64,000 nt of DNA, from the NCBI GenBank assembly GCA_020891255.1, contig BQFW01000013.1, positions 1 through 64,000 of the forward strand. Reading direction: 5' to 3'. Of this stretch, positions 1 to 12,086 are shown in pieces; position 1 is the stretch's first letter; each line of letters starts with the position of its first letter. The notes below the pieces were generated by a model. That model was not told where the DNA came from. It saw only the letters and a program-made list of their open reading frames with translations, and did not search any database. The position numbers and the translations under genes are program-made. The DNA is from Entomortierella parvispora E1425 (lineage: Eukaryota; Fungi; Mortierellomycota).

Positions 1-159
1 ATCCTAAAAACTTAAAAACCCTAAAAAACCCTAAAAAACCCTAAAAAAACCCTAAAAAACCCTAAAAAAACCCTAAAAAACCCTAAAAAACCCTAAAAAA
101 CCCTAAAAAACCCTAAAAACCCTAAAAAACCCCTAAAAAAACCCCTAAAAAACCCTAAA
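1..159. repeat. Telomeric repeat array (C-strand), unit CCCTAAAAAA (TTTTTTAGGG on G-strand), variable A-run 5-7 and C-run 3-4
   Basis: About 15 tandem C(3-4)TA(5-7) units start at base 1 and end abruptly at about 159; C-rich strand faces 5', as expected for a left chromosome end. Confidence 0.95.
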
Positions 160-700: not shown

Positions 701-1442
701 TTTTTTGGAAAAAAAAATTCTCTCCTAAGTTGGAGGAGTGAAGTGGTGACAGGAGCCGAGAGCTAGCCACTTACGACAATTCGTGGCTGCATTTCATGAA
801 GTACGAGAAGGAAAAAGAGCCAAGTCTGCAGTGTTTACTCTCCTCATCGTGCATGCAGACAAGAACATCAGCTCGTGCAGTTGTCACGTAGTTTTTTTAT
901 TAAAAGTTGTACACGCTAGACAAAAGTAGGAACAAGAGGGCAGAGACGAGGGCGCAAAACACATGAGACTGCGGTGACTTTGCCCTGGAACGGACTCATT
1001 CCTCGCTACTGCATGCTCTGCCTGAGGGCCAGAGAAATCTAGCAGTTGATGGTAGAGAGGACTTACCTGAGAAGTGCTCGCCCCTGAATTAAGGACTTCA
1101 TGTTTCCTGCATGCCTCCCGTTTGTCGCATGTCCAGTCTGGTTCATGGGTAAGTGGAATGAGCTTTCTCTGTATGATTAGATGTAAAAGAAGTTGTGGTT
1201 GACGACAAAGGGAAGGAATAGCGAGTAACGCGTGAGAAAAGTGGGAGAAAGTGAGAGGAAACACTCAAGCTTGCGAAAACACGAAGAGAAGAAGTGAGCG
1301 AAAACAAAGACAGGGGCACAAAAGACCCGCTGATGTTTGATGTAAGAGTCGAGTTGGATGCATTGGGTCGGTTGAGACGGCGGCCGCAAAAGGTGAAAGA
1401 TGTGAGTTCGAATCATGAGAGGAGAAGGATGCACGAGATGAG

Positions 1443-1568
1443 ATGCAACAGAGAAGAGAGATGCAACAGAGAAGAGAGATGCAACAGAGAAGAGAGATGC
1501 AACAGAGAAGAGAGATGCAACAGAGAAGAGAGATGCAACAGAGAAGAGAGATGCAACAGAGAAGAGAG
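1443..1568. repeat. 18-bp minisatellite (ATGCAACAGAGAAGAGAG)x7
   Basis: Seven perfect copies, visible as MQQRRE x7 in ORF 1443..1664. Confidence 0.95.
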
Positions 1569-1826
1569 ATACAAAAAGGAAAAGGTATGCAGGAGACGAG
1601 AGATGCAAGAGAGGAGAAAGATCCAAAAAAGAAGACGGATGCAAGACACGGGAGGACAGGGTAAGGATACAAGAGTCGAGGAGAAAGGAAGGATGCAGGA
1701 ATCGAGACGAGAGAGACGAGAGGAAAGGGATGCAAAAAACGAGACGAGAGAGAGGGATGCAGGAGGCAAGAGGGATGCGAGAATTGAATGCATGAGACGA
1801 GAAGGTCGAACGATGCAAGAGACAGC

Positions 1827-2309: not shown

Positions 2310-3060
2310 GGGAGGGAAGAGGAAAGGAGGAAAGAGAATAGGAGGGATAACAGCGAGGAGAAGAGGAGGAACAAGAAGAAAGCGAAGAGGAGGGACAAGA
2401 AGGAGAAGAGGAGGAGGAACAAGAGGCAGAGAAGAGAGGGACGAGAGGGAAAAGAAGAAGAGACGGACAGCGAATCCAACAACAGCTGAGACAAACGACC
2501 CCCTTGCGGGTCCCTTTGTGCTTTTTTTTTTTTGCGCTGTCATCCCGAGGGAAGGGTGGACGAGCACGAAACTCACGTCATGCGACCAAAAAGTGCAAGA
2601 GTGAAGACAAGAAATGATCAAGACGGACGAACAAGAGAGATGAGAAGACGAAAGACGATCAAGAGGGAAGAGAAGAAAGGAAAGAAGGGAGAGAGAAGAA
2701 GAGAGGGACAGTTGACAAGTTCAAGAGAAAAGAAGACATCAGCAAAGGAAAGTAAGAGGAAGAAAACGGTGGAGCAAGAAAGAAGAGAAGAGAGGGAAGA
2801 CACGAGAGGAACAAGACGGAAGAGAAGAGAAGAGAAAGAGGGAAAAGAGGAGAGGGACAGGGCGGAAGAAGAGATGAGCAAGAGAGAAGAGAAGAGACGA
2901 GCAAGAGAGAAGAGAAGAGACGAGCAAGATGGAAGAGAAGAGACGAGCAAGAGGGAAGACCGAAAAGAGAGACAATCAAGAGAGAAAAGAGGAGATGAAC
3001 AAGAGGAAAGAGAAGAAAAGAGACGTTCGTCAAGAGAAAGGAGCAAGGGAGAAAGACGAC
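2310..3060. repeat. GA-rich polypurine/polypyrimidine low-complexity tract
   Basis: + strand is mostly A/G (GAGAAGAGA-type degenerate units) apart from a mixed stretch near 2480-2600; yields only low-complexity E/R/K or S/L/F ORFs. Confidence 0.85.
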
Positions 3061-7101: not shown

Positions 7102-9444
7102 ATGAAGTCAAGAACGAAAAAGGCCAACGGCATTCTCACGCCATCTCAGCAAGCCCATTACCAAGCACACCAACATTCAATGTCACCAGCGGCAGCAATG
7201 TGTGTCGCGGAATCTGGGCATTCGGGAAACAATGCCGAGGTCAACAAAGCAATCCAAGTCGTTGTAGACGTGTCAATACAACAAAAGGGGACAGGACCTC
7301 GAGGAACCTCTGCGAATAGTACTCCAGCGCCAATAACATCCATGGAGACAGAGTATATCGAGGCCCTCTATGCCTCTACATCCTCTGGTCATCTGTCGCA
7401 GGATATGGGACAGGACAACCTCAGGGAGTCGCACTTGGAGGACCCAGTCGCAGACAACTCTACATCAGGATCTGAGGACTTGGAGTTTGACGACCTGGCC
7501 AGTTATGATCACGGCGAGGATGGTGATTGTGAGGACTCGGATGAAGAGCTGGATGACTATGAACACGACAACTTCTTGTCCGTGCACGAGGCGGTGCTTA
7601 TGGAGTTGCGGAGGGAACAGGTCGAGTTTGAGGAAAACGTGCGCCAACTTCAACAACAGTTGCAGAGGGAAGGATCCATTTTTCCGCTTTCGCCCAACGA
7701 CACCCCTGAGCTTGAGAACATTACTCACAGCGATGCATACTCAGATTCCACAGATCAACCGACAAAGCCAATTGAAGGAACCAGCTTACACATTGAATCC
7801 GACACCCATGGCCGGCTATCCAATCAAGCGCACAAGTTGGTTCACCAGCGACCAAAGAAAGTAACATGCGCTTTTTGTCAGGAACCAAAGTCTTCTCTTT
7901 GCTTTGAAAACCTTGGCTGGGCTTGGAGACCATTGATTGTGGAGGCTCTGGCAACAGCCGCTGCGGCGATAACAATGTTCAAGGCGAGGAAGGATCAAGA
8001 GCCATACAAACGGATCTCCTTATTCTTACGGGAACGAGATCTCGCTCATATGAACGGTCTAGACACTGAAGAATCATCTCAGGACAGAAATTTTGCTCAG
8101 ACACCATACTTTTCGAGGTGAGGAAAACATCCGCTCTCTATCATCACACCACCCCAGCCTGTAGCATGAATGAAAAACTCACCTCATTTTCATTCCCTTA
8201 CCAGACATTCTCAGGAGGAACATAAGGATCCGATGGGCGATCGTTTGAGGAGCCAGGAAGTATTTTCAGACGGGATGCCTCCTGGTTCAGGGCAGGCAAT
8301 GTATCCGCTTCCACCAAACTCGCCGTATACCTTCAGGAGGAAAGCGAGCGAGTACTTGGAGCCAGTTGGGGAATTTCAGGAATTTCAGTCTGCTGAGGGT
8401 AACTCACGGCAGGTATTGATGCATGTCTGGCCCCCATCAGAGCTGGACACAGCACTTCTCAAGAAACTCGAGACATGCTGTCGCGACTTTCAAGAAAACG
8501 AAATTGTCCGTGGCCACAGTGGAGATGGCTTTTTGAATGGATGGAGACCCTCTTGGGTACCACAAAATCGGACAGGAGTCTTGCGGTTTGGCCACTGGAG
8601 GGTACGAGCCCCTGATAACCCTGAAGAGCAGCTATATGTAAGTCATAGGCCGGCACTGTCACAGTCCATACAGTGGTCCAGGGTATTGACAAACTGTCTT
8701 TTGAATCCGCTTCCCCTTCTATAGGCTCCATTCCAAACACCATTGACCTTGGCTGCTGGAGGAGGCACTGTTTTGGGATCAACAGTCAATTTGGGCGCGA
8801 ATCTCGATGACGCTTTGACAAGTTCAATCTCTAAAGAACAAGCACAGAGGCGTCATCACAATGTGGGCTCCTCACAGGGAAGCGCTGGTCAACAGGAAGA
8901 CATACAGTTCGAAAAGGCAACTTGCCCAGTGCATCACCCCCATCACTGCTGTGATCATGGAGCCGAACAACACGATTCCGCCACCCACCCCCAAACAGAT
9001 TCACAGCTGGAATCCTCCACACAAAAACGACTGCTACGACTGGTCCGCTCTATTCAGATGGTAGAAAAAGGTATCATTGCCAGACATCTCAAATATCTCT
9101 TTCCGACGCTTTACGAAAAATACCACGGCCTGCAATTTGGAACTCCACGATTGTTTGATGCTGTTGCCACAGTGGCAATGGCTGTCGATGTCGCCCCTCG
9201 GCTTCACCACGACAGGGCTCACACTCGGCACGGCTTTTGCTGGATCGTTGCTTGCGGTGACTTTGTAGGAGGCGACCTTTGCATTCCAGAGTTGGGGAAG
9301 CGCGTCGTCATGAGGCCAGGCACCGTAGTCGCCATCCGATCGACTGTGGTCGCGTATTACATTGAGCGCTATGCTAAAGGGACCAACATGTATACCATGT
9401 ACGCCTATACGGCGGACAACTGCTGGCCTCCAGCTTTAGAATAA
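7102..9444 (+). CDS. TET/JBP-family 2OG-Fe(II) dioxygenase-like protein, 722 aa; exons 7102-8117, 8205-8637, 8725-9444
   Basis: Two 87-nt GT-AG introns give one 2169-nt frame. The C-terminal DSBH has fungal TET/JBP hallmarks: RFGHW, LFPTLYEKY, HHD (9205-9213), FCWIVACGDFVGGDLCIPEL...MRPGTVVAIRS. The N-terminal half is acidic and low-complexity with a CAFC motif. Confidence 0.75.
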
Positions 9445-10364
9445 ATTATTGGCAGTGTGTTGCGCCAAGGTGTATAGACCTCACCTTTTAAAACTTCATC
9501 ATAGAGAACGATACATGATATCTGGAATGCTGGAAAGCAACCATGTCCCGGAAATTTGGCGGACTCTGTATAAATTGGCGGGAAACGACTGAGAAGGCGG
9601 TAACCGTCGTGGAGGCACTACATCGACCTGCCATTGCTGAACAGACTGTAGCGCCATAGTGACCATTGCTTGCTATTGTTTGAAGCTACGCCCAGAATAA
9701 CAAAAAAAAAAAAAAAAAAAAAAAAGAGCAAAAGCAGGGTAGACGTTTGCCGTTTGTTTGCAAACATGGCTCTCGAGCAGTGCTCTCATGGAGTGGAGGA
9801 TGTTCTTTGTTTTCATTTCTGACCTCGATTCTTGTCACGCACTAATTGCCCTCGCCCCAGCCTGCCGATTACCAGCAGCAAGCTTCAATTGCAAAAAAAA
9901 ATAATAATAATGATCAAGTAGACCGATGCTCTTTGCTGTCCGCTCTCAAGAGGTCTGGTACTGTACTCTTGGCTAGCGCACGAGTAGAGTCGTCGGAGGA
10001 TGTCCCAGGAGGAATGGAGGGTAATAATGACATGACCAGGCATCCTGGTGCTTCCTTGCATCCTGCTTCTTGTCAGCTGGCGTGTCGCCGCATCCGCCCA
10101 TCCAGCTGATTCTAAAAAGAAAGGTCTCGTCGCCCTTCTTCTTTATGAGCAAGGTACATGTGCAGTACATTCGTGATCCAGACGAGGAGAGAATTGGCAG
10201 CGTCAGCAGAGTTGACAGCCCTTCGGCCGCAGAGACAAGACGGCAGGAAAGAAGGCCGAACGAGAGCAGGGCGATGCTGGGACAAAGGCATTTGGTCGTT
10301 CTGCATCCATCCACACCCACACACAAACAGAGACACCAACCGCCCTGTTTCTCCTTCCCCTTGT

Positions 10365-10722: not shown

Positions 10723-12086
10723 ATGGGCAGCAGCCAGTCCTCTCTGCAGGTCCGCCTGCAGAAAAAGCCAAAGATGTCCCAACAAGAACTCCAGCGTCAG
10801 TATCAACGGAACCTCAGCGAGCAGCAGCTCGCCGACCACCTCTCGGCTCGCCGTGCTCTCGAAGACAGTTCTATTTCCCGTACAGCAGACCTTTGCCAGA
10901 TCCCCGGCATCAATGGCCAGGCCCCCTCTATTATTGCCTCCACCGCCAATAACGAGAGCTTTTACCATCAGCGCCCCACTACCATCCATTCCACAGCCGA
11001 CGGCTCCAGGACGCGCCAAAACTTTCGGTGGATTGATGGTCGGCGACATCACAACATGGAGGGGGCACCCTACCTCCTGCCCAATGACATTGATGAAATG
11101 GACAGGTAGCGATTGAACATTGTTTGCTTGAACAAAGAGTCGAAAGCACCCCGAAGCTGACCTGCTCTTGACCCCCTTTGTGCCACCAAAATAGACTGCA
11201 TCTCCAGCATTATGTGATCCGCCATGCCTTTGGAGGGAACACACGCGCAAAGTTTGACGGCAAGGTGCACAAGGACGTGCTGGATGTTGGATGCGGGCCG
11301 GGCACATGGATCCTAGGCATGTCCAATCAGTCGTCTGTCTGCATGTTTCTATGACTTTTTTTTTGTTCACCTGTCACTAATGCCTTCGACCATTCGTATC
11401 TCTACCACACCACAGAAATGTCAACGGAGCACACAGAAACAAACTTCACGGGAATCGACATATCAGCCGTGTGGCCGACAGAGATTCGACCTCGCAACTG
11501 CCGATTCCAGGTAGTCGATGCAACACAAGGACTACCTTTTGAGGACAACACATTCGATTTTGTTTATCAACGGTTCATGATCCTGGGCTACCCCGCTGCT
11601 TCCTGGCCATTTGTTATTCAGGAGCTTGTTCGAGTTACAAAGCCGGGGGGGATCATTGAGTTGACCGAGATACCAGTGGTCTCCAATGCGAACGGCCCAG
11701 AACTTTCACGTATCATGGAGATCCTAGAGGCAGGGTGCATAGCAAAAGGACTAGACACCAAGGTGGCCAAGAAGCTCGACACACTACTGAGGGATGCTGG
11801 ACTTGTCGATGTCAAGTCCTGTCATGCCTCAATCCCAGTAGGCGCCTGGGGCACAAAAGTGGGGCAGCTCATGAGGGAGAATTCTGCCGGAATCTGGGCA
11901 AGTCTCAGAGGATGGATCAAGGAACTGACAAATATGAACGACGCCCAGTACGAGGCCATGATCAAGAGGATCTTTGTCGAATATGAAGTTCACAGGTGCT
12001 ACGTCAACTGCTATTGCGCCTGGGGTGTCAAACCTCATCCACAGGATTCCAGTTTAGAAGCCGAAACCTCCGCGAACCAGCATTGA
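10723..12086 (+). CDS. Class I SAM-dependent methyltransferase (LaeA/TdiE-like fungal family); exons 10723-11105, 11195-11316, 11416-12086
   Basis: PYLLPNDIDEMDR|LHLQHYVIRHAFGGN...VLDVGCGPGTWIL|EMSTE...FTGIDIS...LPFEDNTFDFVYQR...ELVRVTKPGGIIELTE. The second intron is GC-AG. Confidence 0.9.

What the first reader, a model, noticed from the sequence alone, without database searches (positions are those of the whole stretch)
7102..9444. Subtelomeric TET/JBP-like dioxygenase with an apparently broken catalytic triad
The frame is intact over three exons and keeps HxD (HHD). By alignment the distal Fe-binding His is Tyr (TAT 9355-9357, one C->T from CAT) and the 2OG-binding Arg is Met (ATG 9388-9390). 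It may be a catalytically dead modified-base reader, an enzyme with altered chemistry, or a recently inactivated copy. Fungal TET/JBPs are best known from basidiomycetes, linked to Kyakuja-Dileera-Zisupton transposons, and Coprinopsis CcTet acts on 5mC and 6mA. Early-diverging fungi use 6mA, so a member in this lineage matters. No transposase is visible nearby.
Basis: partly seen in the sequence, partly recalled or inferred. Interest (0 to 1): 0.8.

Follow-up and report, generated by a model that had tools for sequence, protein, structure and literature searches.

The report
Conserved TET-like protein with remodelled active site
This soil-fungus gene encodes a relative of the TET/JBP DNA-base oxidases that lost key iron- and cofactor-binding residues long ago, yet has been tightly preserved across the whole family Mortierellaceae, so it is an old, working, re-purposed protein and not a freshly broken enzyme.

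Summary
A three-exon, 722-aa gene (7102-9444, +) lies 7 kb from a telomere array. Its last ~350 aa adopt a TET/JBP fold: the model of an orthologue matches CcTet and NgTet1 at Z 19.4 and TET2 at 16.8.

- **Kept:** the HxD motif (H644, D646).
- **Changed:** the distal iron His is Tyr694. The 2OG Arg column holds Thr703 or Met705, depending on the alignment. The Asp/Asn that binds the base N4 in TET2, NgTET1 and CMD1 is His649.

This is not a private or recent lesion. All 24 Mortierellaceae orthologues that cover the domain, from about ten named genera, carry H..D..H...Y...M. Synonymous sites are saturated, while pN is 0.04-0.10 in the domain. The clade has a long stem (1.59) and very short inner branches. 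Intron-less contigs from five public runs point to spliced transcripts in related fungi.

The gene is single-copy here, sits among conserved host genes, and has no transposase nearby. Its telomeric position is lineage-specific.

Best reading: a TET/JBP-derived protein that no longer works as a canonical Fe(II)/2OG oxidase and probably acts by binding. The same His-to-Tyr exchange occurs in Epe1 and PHF2. An atypical active enzyme is not excluded. The family appears undescribed: its members are all named 'hypothetical protein', with no Pfam call.

The parts
7102..8117 (+). Exon 1 (aa 1-339). Basic N-terminus, then motif TSMETEYIEALYA (7336-7374), an acidic tract, a coiled-coil-like ELRREQVEFEENVRQLQQQLQR (7603-7668), and CxxCxxPK...C...GWxWRP followed by an Ala-rich hydrophobic helix (7867-7971).
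   Evidence: ORF and splice model. The short motifs are conserved among orthologues while the rest is variable. Pfam and Atlas searches were blank.
8118..8204 (+). Intron 1 (GTGAG...CAG, 87 nt).
   Evidence: Needed to pass the in-frame TGA at 8119-8121. A gap at the matching place appears when intron-less contig L007 is laid on genomic L001.
8205..8637 (+). Exon 2 (aa 339-483). Holds most of the N-terminal half of the TET/JBP fold, including VRGHSGDGFLNGWRPSW (8506-8556) and LRFGHWRV (8581-8604).
   Evidence: 77% aa identity to Mortierella sp. AD031 and to Podila. pN 0.056 against a saturated pS versus Gryganskiella. The structural alignment to CcTet, NgTet1 and TET2 spans model residues 1-344, which include this part. 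The FGHWR motif recurs in canonical relatives.
8638..8724 (+). Intron 2 (GTAAG...TAG, 87 nt).
   Evidence: The junction LY|APFQTPL is continuous in orthologous proteins and in the intron-less contigs.
8725..9444 (+). Exon 3 (aa 484-722 plus stop TAA 9442-9444). Contains the end of the N-terminal half, a variable insert and the C-terminal DSBH half.
8767..9021 (+). Poorly conserved insert within the fold (aa 498-582), with a Cys/His-rich loop CPVHHPHHCCDHG (8923-8961).
   Evidence: pN 0.37 here against 0.04 in the flanking domain. pLDDT is below 50 in the orthologue model. A C..H...C pattern recurs in orthologues.
9022..9441 (+). C-terminal half of the TET/JBP double-stranded beta-helix (aa 583-722).
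   Evidence: phmmer found 140 relatives, of which 114 of 139 scanned carry Pfam Tet_JBP. hhalign against canonical relatives gives 99.6% probability, E 1.5e-23. The profile hits CcTet at 1.3e-11. Core pLDDT is about 90.
9205..9213 (+). Retained HxD metal motif (H644-H645-D646).
   Evidence: Aligns with CcTet H326-R-D328. His is invariant in 139/139 and Asp in 137/139 relatives.
9220..9222 (+). His649, in the HxDxxD/N position.
   Evidence: Asp in 131/139 relatives and His only in this clade. This position is D350 in CMD1, N1387 in TET2 and D234 in NgTET1, and binds N4 of 5mC (PMC7854593). It aligns with CcTet G331 (PMC12730594).
9355..9357 (+). Tyr694 (TAT), in the distal iron-binding His position.
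   Evidence: His in 126/139 relatives. Aligns with CcTet H376 and with the His column in hhalign. Tyr in 24/24 orthologues.
9376..9378 (+). Lys701. K or R in all orthologues, two residues before the canonical Arg column and on the same strand face by alternation. A possible substitute 2OG ligand (inference).
   Evidence: No coordinates were available to measure distances.
9382..9390 (+). Thr703-Asn704-Met705. The canonical 2OG C5-carboxylate Arg column falls on T703 (ungapped) or M705 (gapped), and the following Ser column falls on M705 or T707.
   Evidence: T703 and M705 are invariant in orthologues.
14..159 (.). Telomere repeat array, (CCCTAAAAAA)n. This is context and not part of the gene.

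Best explanation
The gene encodes a Mortierellaceae-wide, single-copy, non-transposon descendant of the TET/JBP nucleic-acid dioxygenases.

Shown: its last ~350 aa keep the complete TET fold, split by a variable Cys/His-containing insert. On the stem of the family the catalytic pocket was rebuilt. HxD was kept. The distal His became Tyr694. The 2OG C5-carboxylate Arg and its partner Ser became Thr703/Met705. The base-N4-binding Asp became His649. The pocket-lining last strand became Tyr/Met-rich. The new state has since been held almost unchanged by strong purifying selection.

Inferred: the protein no longer carries out the canonical Fe(II)/2-oxoglutarate oxidation of 5mC, 6mA or T. It acts through binding, most plausibly of nucleic acid or a flipped or modified base in the retained pocket. 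A metal may still be held by His644, Asp646 and Tyr694 (or His649). The acidic, coiled-coil N-terminal half would serve as an interaction module. [quoted passage not shown]
For: - **Fold.** The AF2 model of the Podila orthologue (pTM 0.69, core pLDDT about 90) matches CcTet at Foldseek E 3.7e-10, then NgTet1, CMD1 and TET2. VIA Z is 19.4, 19.4 and 16.8, against 14.4 for the next family, FTO.
- **Homology.** 140 phmmer hits, 114/139 scanned with Pfam Tet_JBP. hhalign 99.6%. The profile hits CcTet at 1.3e-11.
- **Substitutions at near-invariant columns.** H to Y (126/139 His), R to M or T (117/139 Arg), D to H (131/139 Asp).
- **Fixation.** All 24 orthologues that cover the domain share the pattern, as do P0190 and P0191, found by a separate search.
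- **Selection.** pN is 0.04-0.10 in the two fold halves against a saturated pS of 0.73-0.91. The linker has pN 0.37.
- **Tree.** The clade has 100% SH-aLRT support, a stem of 1.59 and inner branches of 0.07 or less.
- **Context.** Host-gene synteny and no transposase.
- **Expression in relatives.** Intron-less contigs from five runs point to spliced transcripts.
- **Second strain.** Another strain carries only an in-frame 3-nt indel inside the CDS (7102-9444), while frame-breaking indels lie in the flanks.
- **Roles of the changed residues and the analogy.** PMC7854593 and PMC11790891.
Against: - Loss of activity is inferred from sequence only.
- HxD is strictly retained, and His649 and His652 sit beside it. 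That argues for a maintained metal site and so possibly for chemistry.
- PHF2, which has the same H-D-Y set, has been reported to demethylate in vitro.
- A conserved K/R701 lies two residues before the Arg column. From my own knowledge, JmjC and FIH enzymes bind 2OG with Lys plus Thr/Tyr, so a non-canonical 2OG site is conceivable.
- The whole domain is about 90% identical across the family, so invariance of the odd residues is not specific evidence that they themselves are functional.
- No RNA run was listed for this species.
Confidence: 0.6

Rival explanations
1. It is still an active oxygenase with a non-canonical ligand set. Iron is held by His644, Asp646 and Tyr694 (as in PHF2). 2OG is bound in JmjC/FIH style by K/R701 with Thr703 or pocket tyrosines. 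Base specificity is changed by His649.
For: HxD is invariant and there are extra conserved His at 649 and 652. K/R701 is conserved in all orthologues and lies on the same strand face as the Arg column. PHF2 has reported activity despite His-to-Tyr (PMC11790891). The extreme conservation of the pocket strand fits a site that still does precise work.
Against: Several canonical residues are changed together: the distal His, the Arg with its partner Ser, the N4-binding Asp and, in the ungapped alignment, the N3 His column. From my own knowledge, a Tyr ligand favours Fe(III). No other member among 140 relatives shows this combination, so there is no active precedent within TET/JBP.
Confidence: 0.25
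2. It is an enzyme that uses a co-substrate other than 2OG, or does a different reaction on a base. The algal TET homologue CMD1 does this: it cannot bind 2OG properly and uses vitamin C to add a glyceryl group to 5mC.
For: CMD1 shows that a TET-fold enzyme can work without a functional C5-carboxylate Arg (PMC7854593). CMD1 is among the fold matches. The Arg column lacks a basic residue here.
Against: CMD1 keeps the full HxD...H triad and the N4-binding Asp350. Here both the distal His and that Asp are changed. There is no positive evidence for any alternative co-substrate.
Confidence: 0.1
3. It is a recently inactivated copy, a private allele or a decaying pseudogene in a subtelomere.
For: Position 7 kb from a telomere. 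TAT is one transition from CAT. No RNA run was listed for this species.
Against: The same residues occur in 24/24 orthologues across about ten genera. pN is 0.04 with saturated pS. The frame is intact. A second strain keeps the frame inside the CDS. Intron-less contigs of orthologues exist. In three other genera the gene is flanked by ATG7 and is not shown to be telomeric.
Confidence: 0.01
4. It is not of TET/JBP descent but another DSBH family (AlkB/FTO, prolyl hydroxylase) that resembles TET by fold only.
For: The direct Pfam Tet_JBP score is below the gathering cut-off (16.9 against 34.9 bits). FTO, ALKBH3 and PHD2 also give Z 13.5-14.4.
Against: The sequence relatives are overwhelmingly Tet_JBP (114/139). 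hhalign gives 99.6%. The profile hits only CcTet and NgTet1 in the PDB. TET structures stand 2.4 to 5 Z units above other families and cover both halves of the fold. The Atlas feature search gives Tet_JBP clusters at 0.96-0.97.
Confidence: 0.03

Closest known systems
CcTet (Coprinopsis cinerea TET/JBP dioxygenase; PDB 7vpn, 7w5p, 8jkk)
   Same: It is the best structural match (Foldseek E 3.7e-10; VIA Z 19.4 over about 237 residues spanning both halves of the fold) and the best PDB sequence match (profile E 1.3e-11). HxD aligns with H326/D328. Both are fungal.
   Different: CcTet has the distal His376 and Arg385; this protein has Tyr694 and Thr703/Met705. CcTet G331 and D337, which matter for 6mA and 5mC, correspond to His649 and Cys655. 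CcTet belongs to a multicopy group linked to Kyakuja transposons (PMC12730594). This gene is single-copy in the window, syntenic and not next to a transposase. Identity is about 13-14%.
Canonical fungal TET/JBP relatives (e.g. Rhizophagus irregularis P0010, the Pezizales proteins P0217 and P0275, and many metagenomic proteins)
   Same: They are the closest sequence relatives outside the clade (31-33% identity, E down to 8e-11). Shared motifs include FP.LY..Y, H.D, G.CW, GDF.GG.L..P.L and PG.V.AFRS.
   Different: They carry HxDxxD...H...GxRxS, are short (about 250-400 aa) and show long, variable branches (median end branch 0.48). The Mortierellaceae clade sits on a 1.59 stem with near-zero inner branches and has an extra ~370-aa N-terminal region and an insert.
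Epe1 (S. pombe) and PHF2 (animals): JmjC proteins with His-to-Tyr in the iron triad
   Same: The same kind of change (distal His replaced by Tyr with HxD/E kept) in a chromatin-related DSBH protein that stays conserved. Epe1 has no detectable demethylase activity in vitro (PMC11790891).
   Different: They belong to a different DSBH family (JmjC, histone lysine substrates). The likeness is analogy and not homology at family level. PHF2 has reported in-vitro activity. Here the Arg and base-contact residues are changed as well.
CMD1 (Chlamydomonas TET homologue, 5gmC synthase)
   Same: A TET-fold protein in which the C5-carboxylate Arg does not function, so 2OG is not used (PMC7854593). It is a fold match (E 3e-06).
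   Different: CMD1 keeps the HxD...H triad and the N4-binding Asp350, and it is a proven enzyme. This protein lacks the distal His and that Asp.

Membership tests
TET/JBP (Pfam PF12851, 2OGFeDO nucleic-acid dioxygenases) | Significant sequence similarity to the family | tested here: met
   The direct Pfam hit is only 16.9 bits, below the 34.9 cut-off. However, 114/139 of its phmmer relatives carry PF12851, hhalign to canonical relatives gives 99.6% and E 1.5e-23, and the profile hits CcTet at 1.3e-11 and NgTet1 at 3.8e-05.
TET/JBP (Pfam PF12851, 2OGFeDO nucleic-acid dioxygenases) | DSBH fold with the TET-type N-terminal half | tested here: met
   Tested on the Podila orthologue as proxy (92-94% identical in the C-terminal domain). 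pTM 0.69. CcTet, NgTet1 and TET2 are the top matches and cover model residues 1-344.
TET/JBP (Pfam PF12851, 2OGFeDO nucleic-acid dioxygenases) | HxD part of the iron triad | tested here: met
   H644 and D646 align with CcTet H326 and D328. They are invariant in orthologues.
TET/JBP (Pfam PF12851, 2OGFeDO nucleic-acid dioxygenases) | Distal iron-binding His | tested here: not met
   Tyr694 occupies the column (His in 126/139). There is no His anywhere C-terminal of residue 652.
TET/JBP (Pfam PF12851, 2OGFeDO nucleic-acid dioxygenases) | Arg binding the 2OG C5-carboxylate (TET2 R1896, NgTET1 R289, CcTet R385) | tested here: not met
   The column holds Thr703 or Met705 depending on the alignment. 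K/R701 nearby is an untested possible substitute.
TET/JBP (Pfam PF12851, 2OGFeDO nucleic-acid dioxygenases) | Asp/Asn three residues after HxD that binds N4 of the flipped cytosine | tested here: not met
   His649 (Asp in 131/139). The residue's role is taken from PMC7854593. CcTet itself has Gly here, so this feature is not universal.
TET/JBP (Pfam PF12851, 2OGFeDO nucleic-acid dioxygenases) | Fe(II)/2OG-dependent oxidation of a nucleic-acid base | not testable with these tools
   Needs biochemistry.
Transposon-borne fungal TET/JBP (Kyakuja-Dileera-Zisupton, Plavaka and others) | Multicopy, and adjacent to or inside a DNA transposon with a transposase | tested here: not met
   One copy in the window. 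No transposase domain in neighbouring ORFs. The host-gene block ATG7 | gene | methyltransferase | FAM72 | ACOX is conserved across genera. A FAR1-domain neighbour occurs only in Podila verticillata.
Atypical or pseudo DSBH dioxygenases of the Epe1/PHF2 kind (analogy, not homology) | Distal His replaced by Tyr with HxD kept, in a conserved protein | tested here: met
   The description of Epe1 and PHF2 is from PMC11790891.

The most novel reading that the evidence does not exclude
The rebuilt pocket (His649, Tyr694, Tyr695, Met705, Tyr709, Tyr711 around a retained HxD) may be a new functional site. One possibility is a reader that captures a flipped methylated base (6mA or 5mC) in these 6mA-rich early-diverging fungi. 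The other is a TET-fold enzyme that works without 2OG on a new substrate. Either would be the first conserved host-gene use of the TET/JBP fold in Mortierellomycota, and the first family-wide 'pseudo-TET'.
Probability: 0.3. Interest if true: 0.85.

Novelty: new variant of a known kind. Interest (0 to 1): 0.62.

Why it matters
According to the reviews read here, fungal TET/JBP proteins are known as transposon-linked, multicopy genes of Basidiomycota and Pezizomycetes, with CcTet as the only characterised enzyme (PMC12730594; PMC13297926). Here the same fold appears as a stable, single-copy host gene across a family of early-diverging fungi. Its catalytic residues were replaced once and then frozen.

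That pattern points to re-purposing and not to decay. It gives a concrete candidate for a non-catalytic or chemically altered TET-fold protein in a lineage where 6mA is the dominant DNA mark. It also offers a natural test of which TET residues are needed for fold and binding as opposed to catalysis. Finally, it shows that these proteins escape current annotation: every orthologue is named 'hypothetical protein' with no Pfam call.

Tried and rejected
- A single-sequence AF2 model of exon 3 was useless (pLDDT 37).
- An HMM of the exon-2 domain against canonical relatives gave no significant hit (best E 0.17). It did pick up the shared FGHWR motif. hhalign likewise aligned only the C-terminal half. 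Homology of the N-terminal half therefore rests on the structural alignment.
- RNA evidence for this species: no RNA run was listed. Runs with the same species label either hold the gene as DNA (X3) or showed no piece of the CDS (X4, X5, X9). The tool states that this is no proof of absence.
- A finite dN/dS could not be obtained. Synonymous sites are saturated even against the nearest orthologue (Gryganskiella cystojenkinii, 65% DNA identity over the gene).
- The search for canonical TET/JBP paralogues in Mortierellaceae found none named as such. That search scored only 8000 candidates and most hits are unnamed metagenome proteins, so absence is not shown.
- Pfam and Atlas searches of the N-terminal 338 aa gave nothing.
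- Literature searches for TET/JBP together with Mortierella, Mucoromycota or Rhizophagus returned no paper.
- I considered a functional link to the downstream class I methyltransferase gene and set it aside. The whole block is syntenic, so adjacency alone says nothing.
Full report
**1. What is in the sequence.**
The interval 7102-9444 (+) holds an ATG-to-TAA gene. It needs two 87-nt GT..AG introns (8118-8204 and 8638-8724) to stay in frame. The spliced CDS is 2169 nt and encodes 722 aa with no internal stop.

The window begins with a (CCCTAAAAAA)n array at 14-159, followed by purine-rich satellite arrays. The gene is therefore 7 kb from a chromosome end. A tblastn of the protein against the window finds no second copy.

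**2. Is it a TET/JBP protein?**
The direct evidence is weak. Pfam Tet_JBP scores E 0.0038 and 16.9 bits, below the 34.9-bit cut-off. CcTet scores E 0.05 by phmmer.

The indirect evidence is strong:
- A phmmer scan of 1.84 billion representatives with exon 3 gives 140 hits at E of 0.001 or better. Of 139 sequences scanned, 114 carry PF12851.
- A profile that includes the window and its relatives hits only CcTet (1.3e-11) and NgTet1 (3.8e-05) in the PDB.
- hhalign between the orthologue alignment and canonical relatives gives 99.6% probability and E 1.5e-23.
- The Atlas feature search returns Tet_JBP clusters at 0.96-0.97.

I used Podila verticillata P0143 residues 282-625. Its C-terminal domain is 92-94% identical to the window's, with identical key residues. 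With a 63-sequence alignment AF2 gave pTM 0.69 and core pLDDT about 90.

Foldseek ranks CcTet first (3.7e-10), then NgTet1, CMD1 and TET2. VIA-align gives Z 19.4 for CcTet, 19.4 for NgTet1 and 16.8 for TET2. The next families are FTO (14.4), ALKBH3 (14.2) and PHD2 (13.7). The alignments span model residues 1-344.

So the conserved exon-2 block (aa 372-497) is the N-terminal half of the TET fold. Residues 498-582 are a low-confidence insert. Residues 583-722 are the C-terminal DSBH half. The sequence-only tests of the N-terminal half were not significant, so that part of the assignment rests on the structural match.

**3. The catalytic residues.**
The CcTet alignment puts H644/D646 on H326/D328 and Y694 on the distal His376. 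The table below gives the counts in the 139-sequence alignment.

| Window residue | Canonical residue | Count in relatives |
|---|---|---|
| H644 | His | 139/139 |
| D646 | Asp | 137/139 |
| H649 | Asp | 131/139 |
| Y694 | His | 126/139 |
| M705 | Arg | 117/139 |

The Arg assignment depends on the alignment. The 18- and 63-sequence alignments, the profile alignment to CcTet (His376 plus nine residues is Arg385) and hhalign are all ungapped. They put the Arg on Thr703 and the following Ser on Met705. Either way no basic residue occupies the Arg column.

According to PMC7854593:
- This Arg (TET2 R1896, NgTET1 R289) holds the C5-carboxylate of 2OG.
- The Asp/Asn three residues after HxD (CMD1 D350, TET2 N1387, NgTET1 D234) binds N4 of 5mC.
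- A His eight residues after the Arg binds N3.

Here those positions are His649 and, in the ungapped alignment, Tyr711. An aromatic residue is kept at the stacking position (Tyr709 or Tyr711). No His exists C-terminal of residue 652, so no alternative distal His is available in the right strand.

Two things keep the question open. His649 and His652 flank HxD. A conserved K/R701 lies two residues before the Arg column, which by strand alternation is the same face. I could not read model coordinates, so I cannot say whether these reach the metal or 2OG site.

**4. Private lesion or old state?**
A word-indexed search with the Podila orthologue found 27 proteins, all annotated 'hypothetical protein' and none with a precomputed Pfam domain. 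They come from Podila, Mortierella, Gryganskiella, Gamsiella, Linnemannia, Lobosporangium, Haplosporangium, Dissophora and Entomortierella.

All 24 that cover the C-terminal domain read H.D..H...Y...M. One of them has HRD in place of HHD. The stretch from GDFVGGDLCIPELGKRVVMRPGTVVAIRSTVVAYY is almost invariant. Two further proteins from a separate search (P0190 and P0191), with different linker sequences, carry the same residues. Outside the clade, departures at these columns are scattered, mostly in fragments, and none shares the combination.

Selection was measured with Nei-Gojobori counts:

| Comparison | Region | pN | pS |
|---|---|---|---|
| vs Mortierella sp. AD031 and Podila | C-terminal domain | 0.07-0.10 | about 0.77 |
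| vs Gryganskiella cystojenkinii (nearest) | C-terminal half | 0.039 | 0.73-0.91 |
| vs Gryganskiella cystojenkinii | N-terminal half of the fold | 0.056 | 0.73-0.91 |
| vs Gryganskiella cystojenkinii | Insert | 0.37 | 0.73-0.91 |

Synonymous sites are saturated. The two finite estimates are omega = 0.035 for the C-terminal domain and 0.022 for the N-terminal half of the fold.

A quick maximum-likelihood tree of 140 domain sequences makes the clade monophyletic (SH-aLRT 100). Its stem is 1.59 changes per site and its inner branches are 0.07 or less, against a median end branch of 0.48 elsewhere. Its position among canonical relatives is unresolved. That is the pattern of one burst of change followed by tight constraint.

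A second strain of the same species label (X3) holds the whole stretch at about 3.3% divergence. Inside the CDS (7102-9444) it has only an in-frame 3-nt insertion. One- and two-base indels occur only in the flanks.

**5. Expression.**
No RNA run was listed for this species. However, Logan contigs from five public runs (L006-L010) carry full-length orthologues as uninterrupted ORFs. When L007 is laid on genomic L001 the contig is continuous while the genome has gaps of about 103 and 144 nt at the two intron positions. These contigs are therefore most simply spliced transcripts, although the run type was not checked. On that reading, orthologues are transcribed and the three-exon model is right.

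**6. Context.**
In Mortierella sp. AD031, M. alpina and Lobosporangium the gene sits in the block UQ_con - ATG7 | gene | Methyltransf_11/25 | FAM72 (PF14976) | ACOX. The window keeps the downstream side collinear but lacks ATG7 and UQ_con. The G. cystojenkinii contig also ends 3.8 kb upstream of the gene.

The telomeric position is thus specific to this lineage. Neighbouring ORFs have no transposase domain. Only Podila verticillata has a FAR1-domain gene next door. This is a host gene and not a transposon passenger.

**7. Reading.**
*Shown:* a TET/JBP-fold protein. Its canonical 2OG/Fe and base-contact residues, apart from HxD, were replaced at the base of Mortierellaceae and then conserved.

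*Inferred:* it is not a canonical 2OG oxidase, and most likely works by binding. The closest precedent for the His-to-Tyr change is in another DSBH family. Epe1 has no detectable demethylase activity in vitro. [quoted passage not shown] PHF2 is also the reason an atypical active enzyme cannot be dismissed.

CMD1 shows that a TET fold can do chemistry without using 2OG, but it keeps the full triad. I put about 0.6 on the non-canonical, probably non-catalytic reading. I put 0.25 on an active enzyme with a non-canonical ligand set, 0.1 on a different co-substrate or reaction, and almost nothing on pseudogene or non-TET origin.

**8. Novelty.**
The December 2025 survey of transposon-borne fungal TET/JBP genes does not mention Mortierellomycota. 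The June 2026 review of fungal DNA methylation places TET/JBP in Basidiomycota and Pezizomycetes. Searches pairing TET/JBP with Mortierella, Mucoromycota or Rhizophagus found no paper.

Canonical relatives do exist in Rhizophagus irregularis and in Pezizales. I file this as a new variant of a known kind: an evolutionary member of TET/JBP that fails the catalytic membership features.

Noticed in passing
window 14-159: The telomere array has a 10-nt unit, CCCTAAAAAA on the + strand, which is (TTTTTTAGGG)n read toward the end. That is longer than the usual fungal TTAGGG.
   Followed up: partly
window 1440-1644, 1833-2120, 2319-3016: Purine-rich tandem arrays (18-24-nt units) sit behind the telomere. 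They cause strong GC and AT skew and produce long ORFs in all three minus frames. Pfam is blank, so this is satellite and not genes.
   Followed up: partly
window 8923-8961 (aa 550-562): A Cys/His-rich loop, CPVHHPHHCCDHG, lies inside the otherwise unconserved insert of the fold. A C..H...C pattern recurs in orthologues. It could be a small metal-binding loop.
   Followed up: no
window 7336-7374, 7603-7668, 7867-7971: Three short motifs are conserved across genera in the otherwise fast-evolving N-terminal half: TSMETEYIEALYA, a coiled-coil-like ELRREQVEFEENVRQLQQQLQR, and CxxCxxPK...C...GWxWRP followed by an Ala-rich hydrophobic helix. No family match was found.
   Followed up: partly
window 9702-9726: An A25 tract lies about 260 nt downstream of the stop codon.
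   Followed up: no
window 10750-12036; L001 15591-17432; L003 7652-9144; L004 15631-16938: A class I SAM methyltransferase gene (Methyltransf_11/25) lies directly downstream of the TET-like gene in the window and in four other Mortierellaceae genomes (Mortierella sp. AD031, M. alpina, Lobosporangium, Gryganskiella). It is part of a larger syntenic block, so no functional link can be inferred.
   Followed up: partly
L002 12286-14636: In Podila verticillata the orthologue's downstream neighbour is a FAR1-domain (Mutator-transposase-derived) gene. This neighbour is absent at the other loci.
   Followed up: no
L006-L010 (Logan contigs of SRR6256838 and SRR6256857-60): Full-length intron-less copies of the orthologue, with UTR-like flanks. 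They are most simply assembled transcripts of related Mortierellaceae.
   Followed up: yes
window 8584-8586 (R466): In the N-terminal motif that reads H-x-G-x-W in canonical relatives (His in 50/62), the clade has Arg (LRFGHW). This is another clade-specific change, of unknown meaning.
   Followed up: no
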